From positions 186,001 to 250,000 of the IMG/VR virus record IMGVR_UViG_3300045974_000132: DNA of 64,000 nucleotides, one strand, 5' to 3'. The notes under the pieces were generated by a model. That model saw nothing but the letters and a program-made list of their open reading frames with translations, had not been told where the DNA came from and searched no databases. The translations under genes and the position numbers were made by a program. Shown piece after piece: positions 15,208 through 33,697 of this stretch (its first letter is position 1; each line of letters begins with the position of its first letter).

Positions 15208-16320
15208 TTATTTACAGTTACGTGTAGGTTGCACTGAAGCAGCCGCTACTAAAGCACTTTCAACACCTTTAGTCGGCATGAAGCCTAACTGTTTCTTCAT
15301 AGATCGAAGCATTCTGATCTTTTCCTTTCTAGATATATACTCGTCAAGGTCGAGATACAAACGAGCAATACCTAGATTGTCTGCACTTTTTATAAGATAG
15401 AGAAGAGTGGCAGACTCTTGGTCATCCTCTATCTGTCGATCAACACCCTGACAACCTACTAAGAAGTGCTTTAAGTCTATAGCACCTTCATCTTCGTTGT
15501 CACTCATTACGCTATCCAGGCTTACACTGAAGTTTACCTGAGACGCTTTAGTACCTTGTACATTCCTCTTTTGCAACTGAGGCATTGTATAAGCGATACC
15601 GTACTCATGCCCATAGTTGGCATTTGAATACGTTTGAGCATTTAGAATCCAATAGTTTATGTAACTGGTGAGAGCTCCTTTACTACTATCGTATTTATCA
15701 ATAGCTTTAGTAATTGCCGCCATTAAGCTTTGATAAACGTCTTTGAAGTCAAAGTTTCCAGTCTTTTGTTTGCAGAACGCATGGGCTTGCTTGTAACCAT
15801 GCTTTAGATACTGCTCCACAATGTTATTTCTAAAGGTATACGCGAGTTCAACGTAGTGCCTACATATGTTCAATGTAGAAAACAAGTGGTCGCGTGTAAA
15901 TCCTACGGTACGTTCTATAGCCTGCAACTTAAGGTCTAGGGTGGTTCGCTCCATGTGCTTGGAGCAAGTAAGGTATTTGGTATATAGATCCGTGTAATCT
16001 TCTGTTTCCGAAAGGAAGTTCACAAGGAAACTATATACAAAGCTGCGTTCAATCTTTGCTTTAGATAAAAGGTCTATCTTCCGATCAAGATCAGTAGTGG
16101 TAAGTACATTGCACAGACAGACAATGAATACTTCCCGCTCTAGGGCAGAGATTTTTCTTTTCTTGTTTGTTGCAGCTACACCTAATAGATGGGCTACTTG
16201 TATATCAAATACCTGACTATGGCGAATAATGGGTTCAAGACCCTTATAGATAAGGAAATCAAGAGCTTCCTGTATCTGCCCACCGGTCAGGTTTGAAGTG
16301 TCAATGGGCTTTTTATCCAT
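15208..16320 (-). CDS. phage sigma70-family sigma factor (divergent)
   Basis: region 2 DVYQSLMAAITKAIDKYDSSKGALTSYINYWI; region 3.2-like VSLDSVMSDNEDE. Confidence 0.75.
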   Translation of the reverse strand: MDKKPIDTSNLTGGQIQEALDFLIYKGLEPIIRHSQVFDIQVAHLLGVAATNKKRKISALEREVFIVCLCNVLTTTDLDRKIDLLSKAKIERSFVYSFLVNFLSETEDYTDLYTKYLTCSKHMERTTLDLKLQAIERTVGFTRDHLFSTLNICRHYVELAYTFRNNIVEQYLKHGYKQAHAFCKQKTGNFDFKDVYQSLMAAITKAIDKYDSSKGALTSYINYWILNAQTYSNANYGHEYGIAYTMPQLQKRNVQGTKASQVNFSVSLDSVMSDNEDEGAIDLKHFLVGCQGVDRQIEDDQESATLLYLIKSADNLGIARLYLDLDEYISRKEKIRMLRSMKKQLGFMPTKGVESALVAAASVQPTRNCK

Positions 16321-22745: not shown

Positions 22746-22811
22746 ATCAACTCACTTTATGAAAGGGATTATATACATACAGTTTACAGTTTTCTCTTTT
22801 TGCGGACATGG

Positions 22812-31715: not shown

Positions 31716-32264
31716 TTATTTTCTATCAGTTTCTAAGTAGGTTACCTTCCGATGCTTATCTATTACGCACCTTTCATATACAAACCCTAGAGTATGAATA
31801 AACCTAATAATATGATTGGTGAAGTATCCGCTGTATGTTCCGACTTCCTCAAAAGTAGGAAAGCAATCTATAAAGCTATTGTTTAACGGATCATAGAACA
31901 AAGGAATTCTAGTCTGACCTCTATATACGATCTTAGGTATTGGGAACTCTAGGTTTGTATATACATGTCTACCTAGGTTTGTTAAACTCCGTAGACAATG
32001 CTTTTCCCAAGGATCTTTATGGACGGTATACTTTCGATCTATACCTCGAAAAGTAGATATTAACTCTACCTTTGACGGTAGAACTCCTCGTGACTTACAT
32101 AAGGGACATATACCTACTAGATGGTTTACATTGTTTATCTCAGGGCAGGCAAATACAGACTTAGAAGCCTTTCTATACATTCGTGTAATTCGCTTCCTAT
32201 AAAGGTCGGGAAAATCCTTGAAGGTCGGGAATTTTTTATGTTTTTTAGCGTACTCGGTTGTCAT
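31716..32264 (-). CDS. AT-rich basic hypothetical protein
   Basis: only minus-strand gene in the block; ends at the bidirectional terminator; CTGTAAATA upstream. Confidence 0.6.
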   Translation of the reverse strand: MTTEYAKKHKKFPTFKDFPDLYRKRITRMYRKASKSVFACPEINNVNHLVGICPLCKSRGVLPSKVELISTFRGIDRKYTVHKDPWEKHCLRSLTNLGRHVYTNLEFPIPKIVYRGQTRIPLFYDPLNNSFIDCFPTFEEVGTYSGYFTNHIIRFIHTLGFVYERCVIDKHRKVTYLETDRK

Positions 32265-32344
32265 AAAAATACCGTGTGTAAAATAAATATGAGAAAACTA
32301 CACTTGCATGTATTATTTACAGTTTTTGATATAAATCAATAGTT

Positions 32345-33195
32345 TAGCGTGCCTTACTAGAAAGCACTTTAAATAGACGGTATATGCTATTGGGAAACAC
32401 CTGGCAGAATCTACGGGAAAACAGAGCCTAGAAAAGATAGCGTATGTAGGTTTCTGACTAGGGCTTAAACCATACTGTAAACTACGGTTATAACATGAGT
32501 GTTGTGTGAGTTGGATCGCAGAGCCAATGAGTGTAGCTTGTTATACAGAGTAGCTAGCCGTCGGCGATTGAGACATGTGGGAGTATCATGTGCACTGGAT
32601 CTTTAAGGTTTAGCTAATCGGGCAATTGAACTTTCCAGCAGTCTCTAGTGTGGGCTGACCAGTTCGCTACTGTGCTACCATATAGGCGTCACCGCTGAAG
32701 GCGGGGCGGGAGAGGGTTTAGAAGCCGGAGGCTGATGATTCCCTGACTTGAATTTCGCGGAGCGTAAGTGGCCGTAGTGAGCGGAGCGAGCGAAGGGAAG
32801 TAACGTAGCGTAGCAGGAAATTTAAGGCCTTGAGTGAGCGCAGCGAACGAAGGATATAAGGCAACACAAATGACAACGGAAAAGCAGCTACCATATAGGC
32901 GATTGACAGGCTCCGGGTGTTTGTCAGCTACCTATAAGGCGAACAGATGCCGTGAGGCAAGGTTGCTCATATCCGCGGTCTTACAGACCTTACTTATTAT
33001 GAGTAATCAGTAAAATCTTAAGGAATAATCTAATTTGAACTAAGTTAGAAGGATGTTAACTTATAGATCCTTAATAGAAGTTTTTCCAAAGGAAAAACTT
33101 TGTTTTCTTTAAACACGCGACGCTTCGGCGCCTGCGCTCACCCTGATGATTGCTCTCGGGATGACCGCGCTGGCCACCGCCTGTGCGTAGCTAAA
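32345..33195. other. structured non-coding island (candidate replication origin and/or long ncRNA)
   Basis: no ORF of 60 aa or more; 15-bp and 21-bp direct repeats; many hairpins; AT-rich segment. Confidence 0.6.
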
Positions 33196-33199
33196 TAGT

Positions 33200-33697
33200 T
33201 TGTTAAAGGTTATGCAAAAAAGACTATTAGCGCACCAGTTAGTAGAAGCCTCTAAAGTATTTGCTTACAAAGGTGAGCTATACTTTAAAAGGATTGCTCC
33301 TACTACAGCCGTTGCTCCTCTGTACAACACGGGTCATTACTTCGACCTATCATGTAACGGACTGAGCTTAAAATTCCACCCTATAAGCTTTACACTCCGC
33401 TCTGTACAGCCTATAATCTCTATCAGGGACTTACTTGATCGTGAGTGCTTGCTTGAACGTGCTTTCTTCACCTGCTATTACGATCCTTATTTGTTGATCG
33501 AGGACGTCAAGATCGTTACTAAGATTACCTTAGAAAGTGCAGGTATATCTTACTTATTAAACTGTAAAGTATATACACCGAAGTACGAAATGTTCTATGA
33601 CTACCTTTTGCCAGGTGCTCAAAGACGACATGTTACCGTAAGGGTGGAAAATGTTACAGTCGCACCTTCAATTATCATCAAAAATAAAGCTCCTTAG
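33200..33697 (+). CDS. hypothetical protein
   Basis: 165 aa ORF. Confidence 0.55.
   Translation: MLKVMQKRLLAHQLVEASKVFAYKGELYFKRIAPTTAVAPLYNTGHYFDLSCNGLSLKFHPISFTLRSVQPIISIRDLLDRECLLERAFFTCYYDPYLLIEDVKIVTKITLESAGISYLLNCKVYTPKYEMFYDYLLPGAQRRHVTVRVENVTVAPSIIIKNKAP

What the first reader, a model, noticed from the sequence alone, without database searches (positions are those of the whole stretch)
32345..33195. About 850 bp structured non-coding island: iteron-like repeats, GNA mini-hairpins, tetraloop stems and an AT-rich hairpin run
Seen: the only large gap in a densely coding window. It contains GCTACCATATAGGCG at 32674 and 32887 with a variant at 32927; a 21-bp repeat AGTGAGCG(G/C)AGCGA(G/A)CGAAGG at 32776 and 32833; GC-GNA-GC heptamers at 32757, 32781, 32808, 32838 and 33185, all on the + strand; TGCC-GTGA-GGCA (32948) and CGC-TTCG-GCG (33121) stems; and an AT-rich stretch with the perfect inverted repeat AAGTTTTTCC-AAA-GGAAAAACTT (33078-33100). 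A CTGTAAAC motif at 32475 points into it. Known: d(GCGNAGC) forms very stable ssDNA mini-hairpins; GNRA and UUCG are RNA tetraloops. Inference: a replication origin with a primer transcript, or an undescribed ncRNA of roughly 700 nt.
Basis: partly seen in the sequence, partly recalled or inferred. Interest (0 to 1): 0.65.

Follow-up and report, generated by a model that had tools for sequence, protein, structure and literature searches.

The report
New phage non-coding RNA gene
The largest gene-free stretch of a 286-kb pond phage genome most likely holds a roughly 500-base non-coding RNA gene of an undescribed family with its own promoter-like signal, kept more strictly than the protein genes beside it and followed by a long GC-rich leader of the next gene; no transcript has been seen and its function is unknown.

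Summary
The gap (window 32265-33199, 935 bp) is the largest non-coding stretch in the whole 286-kb phage genome.

It is a composite of three parts:
- Two back-to-back copies of a phage promoter-like motif, ACTGTAAA. One serves the leftward 182-aa gene. The other (32474, + strand) has no ORF behind it.
- Behind that orphan promoter, about 500-550 nt of non-coding sequence (about 32488-33010).
- A second promoter-like motif (CTAATTT, 33030) with an unusually long leader of about 175 nt. The leader holds the AT hairpin and a GC-rich block and runs up to a conserved 161-aa gene.

The same order and spacing recur in four further lineages from other metagenomes. The non-coding unit is 97.8% identical between two relatives whose flanking genes are 59-88% identical. 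A 9-15-bp helix enclosing the GAGCG-rich cluster is kept in every lineage with a different sequence. Motifs are strongly strand-biased.

Rfam has no match, and no long ORF exists. The iteron-like repeats are specific to this lineage, and the genome's GC-skew switch lies 8.5 kb away, so an origin is not supported. It is not excluded either.

Best reading: a new phage-encoded ncRNA family. No transcript data exist and the function is unknown.

The parts
31716..32264 (-). Divergent 182-aa gene, the left border of the gap. It is conserved in this position in relatives (L017, L046, L049, L050).
   Evidence: The ORF is listed. It is 35% identical to the L017 protein. C40, H48, C53 and C56 are invariant. 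Foldseek gives only weak hits (E 0.02-0.6), all to EndA or PD-(D/E)xK-type nucleases, on a model of pLDDT 64. No Pfam or PHROG hit.
32316..32323 (-). Leftward promoter-like motif ACTGTAAA, read on the - strand, 52-59 nt upstream of the ATG of the 182-aa gene.
   Evidence: Across the genome, 18 of 33 copies are intergenic (P = 2.5e-13). They are sense-oriented at a median of 63 nt before a start codon. The motif is present in all relatives.
32324..32473 (.). Spacer between the two divergent promoter-like motifs. It is not conserved.
   Evidence: The contig of run X4 replaces 32354-32463 with 132 unrelated letters. L017 and L050 are 58% identical here. Relatives carry lineage-specific palindromes and repeats in this spacer.
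32474..32481 (+). Rightward 'orphan' promoter-like motif ACTGTAAA.
   Evidence: It belongs to the same motif class but has no ORF within 200 nt downstream. In W, L017, L046 and L049 it is followed after exactly 12 nt by CA(T/G)GAGT.
32488..33010 (+). Proposed non-coding RNA of about 500-550 nt. The ends are inferred, not mapped.
   Evidence: The distance from the rightward motif to the CTAATTT motif is 495-581 nt in five lineages. L017 and L050 are 97.8% identical here, against 59-88% for the flanking genes. The X4 contig is about 90% identical here, while the adjacent 182-aa gene falls below 80%. No ORF. No Rfam hit.
32494..32580 (+). Conserved G/U/A-rich 5' domain: CATGAGT..TGTGTGAGT, a hairpin at 32510-32528, then ATGAGTGTAG..ATACAG..AGTAG..TCGGCG..TTGAGA.
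   Evidence: This is the best-conserved block between deep lineages, 62-68% against 14-50% for the rest. X4 shows no difference at 32464-32553. Indels of 1, 2 and 4 nt show it is non-coding. The closing pair of the hairpin is G-C in L017 and G.U in L050, W and L046.
32692..32733 (+). Two short hairpins with GNA loops: CCGCT-GAA-GGCGG (32692-32704) and AGCC-GGA-GGCT (32723-32733).
   Evidence: Both appear in the folds. The X4 changes fit them: 32700 G>A turns U.G into U-A, and 32728 G>A lies in the loop.
32747..32826 (+). Domain M3: a 10-bp A/U-rich helix (32747-32756 with 32817-32826, one G.U pair). It encloses a 60-nt purine-rich loop with the GAGCG and GCGNAGC cluster and the first 21-nt repeat.
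   Evidence: In each lineage this is the only helix of at least 9 bp with a span of 60-140 nt, and it always encloses the GAGCG cluster. W has 10 bp, L017 15 bp, L049 13 bp, L047 11 bp and L046 9 bp, all with different sequences. Shuffled sequences give any such helix in 6-32% of trials. On the L017, L049 and L047 alignment, 93% of cells are paired against 35-58% for slid controls, with compensatory changes on both sides in 3 pairs of this helix and 1 of the hairpin beside it.
32827..32862 (+). Second, smaller module: GCCTT/AAGGC stem enclosing the second 21-nt repeat. It is a duplication specific to the window's lineage.
   Evidence: Read directly from the sequence. No counterpart exists in L017, L046 or L049.
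32887..32941 (+). Hairpin formed by copies 2 and 3 of the 15-mer: TATAGG pairs with CCTATA around an inner 9-bp stem. The AGCTACCA start is shared with the hairpin GCTACCAC-GCCA-GTGGTAG of L017.
   Evidence: The hairpin appears in the folds. The relatives' hairpin shows an A-U to G-C compensatory change between L017 and L047.
32948..32959 (+). TGCC-GTGA-GGCA hairpin with a GNRA-type loop.
   Evidence: It appears. CGTGAG is shared with L017, where the stem is GGC/GCC.
32961..33008 (+). 3' helix (32961-32971 with 32998-33008) enclosing a terminator-like hairpin (32977-32989) followed by a T-rich run. This is the proposed 3' end region.
   Evidence: Found by the terminator scan and the helix list. 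Relatives have a hairpin before their CTAATTT motif, but a U-run follows it only in some.
33030..33037 (+). Second promoter-like motif, CTAATTTG.
   Evidence: 22 of 42 CTAATTT copies are intergenic (P = 1.7e-15). They are sense-oriented at a median of 38 nt before a start codon. This copy, at 170 nt by that script and about 180 nt before the 33212 ATG, lies furthest from its gene. It is present 154-225 nt before the gene in all ten relatives that have DNA there.
33038..33211 (+). Long leader of the 161-aa gene. It holds the AT-rich perfect hairpin (33077-33101) and then a GC-rich block (about 33113-33190, 60-70% G+C) that includes the CGC-TTCG-GCG stem and the last GCGTAGC.
   Evidence: Eight lineages show the same layout: an AT-rich part, a conserved CTTAAA..G junction, then a 40-100-nt block of 70-80% G+C. 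The block is hypervariable, about 46% identical between L017 and L050 inside flanks that are 94-100% identical. X4 and X5 show six 1-nt deletions at 33140-33176.
33212..33697 (+). Conserved 161-aa gene, the right border of the gap. The same family follows the gap in all relatives.
   Evidence: Relatives were found. The AF2 model has pLDDT 84 with no significant structural match.

Best explanation
The gap is a composite of three units.

(1) Two back-to-back phage promoters. One drives the leftward 182-aa gene.

(2) The other promoter (32474-32481, + strand) drives a non-coding RNA gene of about 0.5 kb (about 32488-33010), which belongs to an undescribed family.

(3) A second promoter (33030) starts the mRNA of the 161-aa gene with an unusually long, structured leader that contains a GC-rich block.

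Shown:
- the motif classes and their orientation;
- the absence of coding capacity;
- the conserved order and spacing in five lineages;
- nucleotide conservation above that of the flanking genes;
- strand-biased motifs;
- a fully covarying helix (M3) that displays a purine-rich GAGCG/GCGNAGC loop.

Inferred:
- the + strand is transcribed, presumably by host RNA polymerase directed by the phage's own sigma factor;
- the transcript ends at the hairpins before 33030;
- the RNA acts in trans as a protein-binding RNA. The single-stranded GAGU-rich 5' end and the GAGCG loop on its A/U stem would be the binding platforms. The divergently encoded zinc-motif, nuclease-like protein is a candidate partner or processing enzyme.
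For: Promoter motif. ACTGTAAA is intergenic in 18 of 33 copies (P = 2.5e-13) and sense-oriented at a median of 63 nt before start codons. The copy at 32474 is the one with no ORF behind it.

Conserved architecture. The order rc-ACTGTAAA, ACTGTAAA, 495-581 nt, CTAATTT, 154-225 nt, ATG recurs in W, L017/L018, L050-L055, L046 and L049. These come from independent metagenomes.

Conservation.
- L017 against L050: 97.8% in the RNA unit, 58.7% in the left gene, 82.8%, 73.8% and 87.8% in the three genes to the right, and 58% in the spacer.
- The X4 contig is about 90% identical over 32464-33046, but the 182-aa gene next to it falls below the 80% threshold.

Non-coding.
- Indels of 1, 2 and 4 nt occur in the best-conserved block, and 1-nt deletions occur in X4.
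- The longest open frame is 80 codons.

Structure.
- The M3 helix is the only long helix of span 60-140 nt in each lineage. It always encloses the GAGCG cluster and has a different sequence each time.
- On the alignment of L017, L049 and L047, 93% of cells are paired against 35-58% in slid controls, with 4 pairs changed on both sides.
- G-C to G.U changes are tolerable only on the + strand. They occur in the 5' hairpin and in the L047/L049 hairpin.

Strand bias. GAGCG 14:1, CGAAG 17:2, TGAGT 13:2, CGAAGG 8:0. All five GCGNAGC copies are on the + strand.

Transcription machinery. A phage sigma-70-type gene is present.

No known family. No Rfam match in the window or in relatives.
Against: - There is no transcript evidence. 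No RNA run holds the sequence.
- The promoter assignment rests on motif statistics only.
- The window's own sequence folds no better than shuffles (z -0.4). In relatives both strands score alike.
- Covariation rests on four or five lineages and on partly hand-matched helices. MAFFT and RNAalifold did not recover them across deep lineages. A covariance model built from three lineages did not find the window or L046.
- The 5' hairpin is degenerate in L049.
- The hairpin at the proposed 3' end lacks a U-run in several lineages, so read-through into the next gene is possible.
- High identity between L017 and L050 could partly reflect recent recombination rather than constraint.
- The protein-binding mode of action is untested.
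Confidence: 0.55

Rival explanations
1. Replication origin fired by a primer transcript, of the T4 oriF/oriG, T7 or ColE1 type. The rightward promoter would make a G-rich RNA that stays hybridised as an R-loop. The + strand GNA mini-hairpins would form on displaced single-stranded DNA. The AT-rich tract at 32990-33110 would be the unwinding element.
For: - A promoter-like motif points into a G-rich (28% G, 18% C), purine-skewed stretch.
- An AT-rich tract sits beside a GC-rich block in all lineages.
- Divergent promoters flank the site.
- Strong nucleotide conservation would fit a cis-acting DNA element as well.
- From general knowledge, not tested here: d(GCGNAGC) hairpins are very stable in single-stranded DNA.
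Against: - The cumulative GC-skew minimum and the main strand switch are at genome position 209,744, which is 8.5 kb to the left.
- The 15-mer and 21-mer repeats are not kept as repeats in L017, L046 or L049.
- No initiator, helicase loader or primase was recognised beside the gap.
- The AT-rich tract lies behind a second promoter motif and is part of a leader whose layout tracks the downstream gene.
- G.U-type changes in helices argue for selection on a folded + strand, not on duplex DNA.
Confidence: 0.15
2. Cis-acting leader. The whole 32488-33211 stretch would be one long 5' untranslated region of the operon that starts with the 161-aa gene. It would carry a promoter-proximal element that modifies RNA polymerase (processive antitermination, as with HK022 put RNA) or controls mRNA stability and translation.
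For: - The best-conserved block starts right behind the promoter motif.
- Terminator-like hairpins follow, and several lack a U-run.
- Helices that bracket the GC-rich block reach the ribosome-binding region in L046, L048 and L017.
- The RNA unit and the 161-aa gene family always occur together.
Against: - A separate promoter-like motif of the commoner class sits between the RNA unit and the gene in every lineage. The gene therefore does not need the upstream promoter.
- The RNA unit is far more conserved than the gene it would regulate, 97.8% against 82.8%.
- A leader of 700 nt would be about 10 to 20 times the typical promoter-to-gene distance in this genome.
Confidence: 0.15
3. DNA-level regulatory region. 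The conserved blocks would be arrays of binding sites for a phage transcription factor or a nucleoid-organising protein, for example the ATGAGTG-type direct repeats about 31 bp apart and the GAGCG cluster. No functional RNA would be involved.
For: - RNGAGTR repeats recur at a spacing of about 31 nt in W, L017 and L050.
- Binding-site arrays can also be strand-biased.
- The region lies between divergent genes.
Against: - About 500 bp of near-invariant sequence is far more than known operator arrays need.
- The M3 arms covary as a helix rather than being conserved as sites.
- The block begins 12 nt after a promoter-like motif, not before it.
Confidence: 0.08
4. Decayed gene or mobile-element remnant without function.
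For: - The GC-rich tail differs in composition from the genome.
- One frame of the tail reads like a signal peptide (direct reading).
- The neighbouring 182-aa gene has a weak nuclease-like fold, as free-standing homing endonucleases do.
Against: - Conservation exceeds that of the neighbouring genes in two independent comparisons.
- Length and order are kept in five lineages.
- No protein similarity and no frame is preserved.
Confidence: 0.03

Closest known systems
GOLLD, ROOL and OLE large ornate ncRNAs. GOLLD and ROOL are often phage-borne (Rfam; PMC12286853).
   Same: They are non-coding RNAs of 0.5 kb or more. They are carried by phages or prophages of environmental bacteria, were found by comparative genomics, and their function is unknown.
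   Different: There is no sequence or structure match to any Rfam model, even at E <= 10. Far fewer homologues are known. The overall fold is much less evidently ornate (z-scores). No tRNA genes lie nearby.
Primer-transcript origins: T4 oriF/oriG, the T7 primary origin and ColE1 RNA II (textbook knowledge).
   Same: A promoter fires into a non-coding, G-rich stretch that is followed by AT-rich DNA.
   Different: No replication evidence exists. The skew switch lies elsewhere. A second promoter and a gene leader occupy the AT-rich part. Helices show RNA-type covariation.
HK022 put and lambda nut promoter-proximal antitermination RNAs (textbook knowledge).
   Same: A conserved RNA element lies directly behind a phage promoter and upstream of terminator-like hairpins.
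   Different: put is about 70 nt with two stem-loops, whereas this unit is about 500 nt. The downstream gene has its own promoter motif. No boxA or boxB-like consensus was found.
CsrB/RsmZ-type protein-sponge RNAs (textbook knowledge).
   Same: A short purine motif is repeated many times and displayed in loops of an otherwise A/U-rich scaffold. This is the working model for domain M3.
   Different: The repeated unit is GAGCG or GCGNAGC, not ANGGA. GGA is not enriched beyond base composition, 14 observed against 13.9 expected.
T4 stable RNAs C and D (species 1 and 2), which are phage ncRNAs of unknown function (textbook knowledge).
   Same: They are stand-alone phage ncRNA genes without an assigned function.
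   Different: The T4 RNAs are 120-140 nt and sit in the tRNA cluster. Here the unit is 0.5 kb and no tRNA genes are present.

Membership tests
Any Rfam 15 family (including GOLLD, ROOL, OLE, HEARO, 6S, tmRNA and riboswitches) | Covariance-model score at or above the family's gathering threshold | tested here: not met
   The whole window gave 0 matches. The region at E <= 10 gave only chance-level hits of 20 bits or less against thresholds of 35-80. Five relatives at E <= 1 gave 0 matches.
tRNA / tmRNA | ARAGORN detection | tested here: not met
   0 genes in the window.
Iteron-type replication origin | Three or more direct repeats of about 17-22 bp, kept as repeats in relatives | tested here: not met
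   The window has three copies of a 15-mer and two of a 21-mer. L017, L046 and L049 have no corresponding repeat families in the homologous part.
Iteron-type replication origin | AT-rich unwinding element beside the repeats | tested here: inconclusive
   An AT-rich tract exists at about 32990-33110 (GC about 0.3). However, it lies behind a promoter motif and within a gene leader.
Iteron-type replication origin | Adjacent initiator gene, and the site coinciding with the GC-skew switch | tested here: not met
   The flanking ORFs have no Pfam or PHROG match. The skew minimum is at genome position 209,744, 8.5 kb away.
Primer-transcript origin (T4 ori, ColE1) | A persistent R-loop whose RNA primes DNA synthesis | not testable with these tools
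   Only the promoter motif and the G-rich non-template strand can be seen.
Independent ncRNA gene | Own promoter | tested here: met
   The ACTGTAAA class is enriched, oriented and conserved, and this copy has no ORF behind it. This is motif evidence only.
Independent ncRNA gene | Own terminator or defined 3' end | tested here: inconclusive
   W and L017 have a hairpin plus a T-run. L046, L049 and L047 have a hairpin without a clear U-run.
Independent ncRNA gene | Conserved secondary structure with compensatory changes | tested here: met
   The M3 helix is present in 5 lineages with different sequences. Four pairs changed on both sides, and 93% of cells are paired against 35-58% in slid controls. 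The sample is small.
Independent ncRNA gene | A detectable transcript | not testable with these tools
   No RNA run holds the sequence.
CsrA/RsmA sponge RNA | GGA motifs enriched in loops | tested here: not met
   GGA is 14 observed against 13.9 expected in W, and 17 against 17.4 in L046.
Type III toxin-antitoxin RNA (ToxI-like) | Tandem repeats of 34-36 nt next to a toxin endoribonuclease gene | tested here: not met
   Only two 21-nt copies exist, 57 nt apart, and only in the window's lineage.
Hidden protein-coding gene (standard code or a reassigned stop codon) | A long open frame, and indels in multiples of three | tested here: not met
   The longest run is 80 codons under the standard code and 105-118 with one stop codon read through. 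Indels of 1, 2 and 4 nt occur. The genome gives no sign of another code, and none is proposed.

The most novel reading that the evidence does not exclude
The conserved three-part module would be a phage ribonucleoprotein system of a new kind. The module consists of the zinc-motif, EndA/PD-(D/E)xK-like 182-aa protein, the 0.5-kb RNA, and the 161-aa beta-barrel protein behind a hypervariable GC-rich leader. The nuclease-like protein would process or be guided by the RNA. The fast-changing GC-rich block would be under diversifying selection in a conflict with the host, for example as a decoy or target of a host defence.
Probability: 0.08. Interest if true: 0.85.

Novelty: new variant of a known kind. 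Interest (0 to 1): 0.55.

Why it matters
Large non-coding RNAs of phages are few, and none has an assigned function. This locus is a compact, testable candidate.
- It has predicted start and end regions.
- It has a conserved 5' sequence.
- Its helix-framed purine loop suggests a protein partner.
- Two conserved neighbouring genes could be tested for binding or processing.

The analysis also yields two promoter-like motif classes for an uncultured jumbo-phage clade, which helps annotate its transcription programme.

It also exposes a hypervariable GC-rich cassette inside an otherwise near-invariant leader. That pattern usually signals conflict or recombination.

If the rival reading (an origin with a primer RNA) were right, this would be the first origin defined for the clade.

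Tried and rejected
- Rfam at gathering and at permissive thresholds, on the window and on relatives: nothing.
- tRNA/tmRNA scan: nothing.
- blastn against 50,697 phage records: no match.
- Flanking proteins in IMG/VR: no relatives. RNR-based distant relatives (L002-L008) hold no similar DNA, no GAGCG cluster and no comparable gap. The 1.1-kb gap in L007 is a tRNA cluster.
- DNA-pattern scans:
  - 22 metagenome hits and 3 viral hits of the first two patterns were chance matches, with no extended similarity.
  - The promoter-plus-5'-motif pattern gave 0 viral hits, and 9 hits in prokaryote genomes that were all chance.
- CsrA-sponge idea: GGA is not enriched.
- Antisense-regulator idea: 11-mers complementary to the 5' domain occur 9 times elsewhere in the genome against about 10 expected.
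- Hidden coding under a reassigned stop codon: no long frame. This was only a check; no other code is proposed.
- Covariance model of M3 plus the adjacent hairpin, built from three lineages: it did not retrieve the window or L046.
- RNAalifold on MAFFT alignments of deep lineages: no usable consensus.
- Global thermodynamic stability: not significant for the window.
- Structure searches:
  - The 161-aa protein gave no significant match. Foldseek E >= 0.036, and VIA Z <= 6 on split-barrel folds, below the noise level stated by the tool.
  - The 182-aa protein gave only weak nuclease-fold hints from a low-confidence model.
- The long-range 10-bp pairing 32834-32843 with 33132-33141 was not found in relatives and spans the second promoter motif. 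It is treated as chance or lineage-specific.
Full report
CONTEXT

The window is positions 186,001-250,000 of a 286,393-bp virus record. The record comes from a pond metagenome.

Its 127-bp terminal repeat has the length of an assembler word. It therefore says nothing about real genome ends.

The genome is densely coded: 93% lies in ORFs under a simple greedy call. It is organised in two transcription arms that diverge at position 209,744, where the cumulative GC skew also has its minimum.

It encodes a sigma-70 region-2 protein at window 15208-16320.

OBSERVATION

The gap between the 182-aa ORF on the - strand (31716-32264) and the 161-aa ORF on the + strand (33212-33697) is 935 bp. It is the largest in the whole genome; the next is 457 bp.

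Five of the genome's 36 + strand GCGNAGC heptamers fall within 430 nt here. The only GAGCG cluster of the genome is here too.

There is no long frame. The longest run is 80 codons, or 105-118 if one stop codon is read through.

Nothing in Rfam matches, there are no tRNA genes, and no sequenced phage is similar.

TWO PROMOTER-LIKE MOTIF CLASSES

Of its 33 copies in the genome, 18 lie in the 6.65% of DNA that is intergenic (P = 2.5e-13). Fifteen of those sit in sense orientation 31-124 nt before a start codon.

A second motif, CTAATTT(A), behaves the same way. It has 22 intergenic copies of 42 (P = 1.7e-15), at a median of 38 nt before a start codon.

The gap holds three such sites:
- ACTGTAAA on the - strand (32323 to 32316), 52-59 nt before the ATG of the 182-aa gene.
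- ACTGTAAA on the + strand (32474-32481), with no ORF behind it.
- CTAATTTG (33030-33037), about 180 nt before the 33212 ATG of the 161-aa gene (170 nt to the ORF start used). This is the longest such distance in the genome.

The 850-bp 'island' therefore splits into four pieces: a promoter spacer, a unit behind an orphan promoter, a second promoter, and a long gene leader.

RELATIVES

The flanking proteins have no relatives in IMG/VR. A word search, a full profile search and a second word search with the alignment found the 161-aa family in eleven further proteins.

Their contigs, from Logan, ENA and JGI assemblies, all show a large gene-free stretch upstream wherever enough DNA is present:
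- L017/L018: 966-973 bp.
- L050-L055: 990 bp.
- L046: 1,097 bp.
- L049: 960 bp.
- One contig without DNA on hand: 905 bp.

In every full-length case the order is rc-ACTGTAAA, ACTGTAAA, 495-581 nt, CTAATTT, 154-225 nt, ATG.

The leftward gene is homologous as well, at 34-35% amino-acid identity.

CONSERVATION

L017 and L050 are two lineages whose flanking genes have diverged. Their nucleotide identity is 58.7% in the left gene and 82.8%, 73.8% and 87.8% in the three genes to the right. From the rightward promoter motif to the CTAATTT motif they are 97.8% identical, while the spacer between the two promoters is 58% identical.

A second comparison points the same way. A contig from another study (run X4) aligns to the window at about 90% over 32464-33046 and without any difference over 32464-33553's first part, 32464-32553. 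The 182-aa gene next to it aligns only in two 18-nt scraps at the 80% threshold. X4 replaces 32354-32463 with 132 unrelated letters.

Between deep lineages the best-kept block is the first ~100 nt behind the promoter motif, at 62-68% identity. It contains indels of 1, 2 and 4 nt, so it is not coding.

STRUCTURE

In each of W, L017, L049, L047 and L046, the only helix of at least 9 bp with a span of 60-140 nt encloses the GAGCG-rich stretch. It starts 201-260 nt into the unit in the four full-length lineages.

The arms differ in every lineage:
- W: 10 bp with one internal G.U pair.
- L017: 15 bp.
- L049: 13 bp.
- L047: 11 bp.
- L046: 9 bp.

Dinucleotide shuffles give any helix of that kind, anywhere, in 6-32% of trials.

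On the alignable trio of L017, L049 and L047, the helix plus the neighbouring GCTRCCAC-GCCA-GTGGYAG hairpin are 93% paired, against 35-58% for slid controls. Four pairs are changed on both sides.

Wobble changes that work only on the + strand are seen in two places:
- the closing pair of the 5' hairpin, G-C in L017 and G.U in L050, W and L046;
- a hairpin shared by L047 and L049.

Motifs are strongly strand-biased: GAGCG 14:1, CGAAG 17:2, TGAGT 13:2.

The limits of this evidence are as follows:
- The window's own sequence folds no better than shuffles (z -0.4). Relatives reach z -2.3 to -5.4, but on both strands.
- Automatic alignment-based folding failed across deep lineages.
- A covariance model built from three lineages did not find W or L046.

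- The 21-nt repeat is a lineage-specific duplication of the purine loop, each copy framed by its own stem.
- Copies 2 and 3 of the 15-mer pair with each other.
- None of these is kept as a repeat in relatives.

THE LEADER

Behind CTAATTT, eight lineages share the same layout. A moderately AT-rich part comes first; in W it contains the perfect hairpin at 33077-33101. A conserved CTTAAA..G junction follows, and then a block of 40-100 nt at 70-80% G+C directly before the ribosome-binding site.

The sequence of the block is hypervariable. It is about 46% identical between L017 and L050, inside flanks that are 94-100% identical. X4 and X5 differ from W there by six single-base deletions.

Helices that bracket the block reach the ribosome-binding region in L046, L048 and L017.

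The UUCG stem and the last heptamer of the finding belong to this block. I have no tested explanation for its variability.

WHAT IT MOST LIKELY IS

The most likely reading is an independent gene for a non-coding RNA of about 0.5 kb. It would be read from the + strand, and it belongs to a family not described in Rfam or in the papers I could search.

The proposed mode of action is a trans-acting protein-binding RNA. The GAGU-rich 5' end and the GAGCG loop displayed on an A/U helix would serve as binding platforms. This is inferred from anatomy only.

Two specific ideas were tested and dropped:
- A CsrA-type sponge: GGA is not enriched.
- An antisense regulator of phage genes: complementary 11-mers occur at chance level.

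The neighbouring 182-aa protein has an invariant C-H-C-C motif. Its only structural hints, weak ones, are to EndA and PD-(D/E)xK nucleases (model pLDDT 64). That makes it a candidate partner, no more.

RIVALS

An origin with a primer RNA remains possible, since a promoter, a G-rich transcript and AT-rich DNA are all present. It lacks conserved iterons, the skew switch and an initiator gene.

A single long cis-acting leader is possible because terminator U-runs are missing in some lineages. However, every lineage has a separate promoter motif before the gene, and the unit is better conserved than the gene itself.

A pure DNA-level site array does not explain the covarying helix arms. A decayed remnant does not explain the level of conservation.

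VERDICT

- This is a new RNA family candidate, of a known general kind.
- It is rare. It was found only in this record and in a handful of freshwater, pond and wastewater assemblies. None turned up in IMG/VR contigs or in prokaryote species genomes by motif scan.

Noticed in passing
window 33113-33190; L017:1466-1505; L046:1557-1660; L047:399-465; L048:250-330: A hypervariable GC-rich block (70-80% G+C in genomes of about 42% G+C) sits at a fixed place in the leader of the 161-aa gene family. It is about 46% identical between two phages that are 94-100% identical on both sides of it. This is unexplained.
   Followed up: partly
whole genome; examples at window 22783-22790 (-) and 33030-33037 (+): Two intergenic, sense-oriented promoter-like motif classes exist: ACTGTAAA (median 63 nt before the ATG) and CTAATTT(A) (median 38 nt). 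CTAATTT is also frequent in distant relatives L004, L006 and L008.
   Followed up: partly
window 15208-16320 (-): The phage encodes a sigma-70 region-2 protein (PF04542, 30 bits). Pfam found no Rpb2-type or T7-type RNA polymerase in the genome.
   Followed up: partly
window 31716-32264 (-): The 182-aa protein family has invariant C40, H48, C53 and C56. Its only fold hints are weak (E 0.02-0.6) and point to tRNA-splicing endonuclease and PD-(D/E)xK nucleases. It is a lone - strand gene in a + strand arm, and it diverges faster than its neighbours.
   Followed up: partly
L049:1337-1411; L017:~790-815; L046:686-745: The spacer between the divergent promoters carries lineage-specific palindromes or direct repeats, possibly operator sites. 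Examples are three copies of GAAAAACACGCCTTTTTGGA in L049 and AAAAGGCGCCTTTT in L017.
   Followed up: no
genome position 209,744 (window ~23,744): The main strand switch of the genome coincides with the cumulative GC-skew minimum. It lies between a 313-aa gene on the - strand and a 367-aa gene on the + strand. On skew alone this is a better origin candidate than the finding.
   Followed up: no
genome ends (G000 1-127 and 286267-286393): The 'direct terminal repeat' of the record is exactly 127 bp. That is the size of an assembler word, so the true termini are unknown.
   Followed up: partly
L017:6745-7602: The relative carries a GIY-YIG / I-TevI-like homing endonuclease gene next to thymidylate synthase, downstream of the conserved module.
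   Followed up: no
L007:4221-5359: A 1.1-kb gene-free stretch in a distant RNR-relative reads as a tRNA gene cluster. It is unrelated to the finding.
   Followed up: partly
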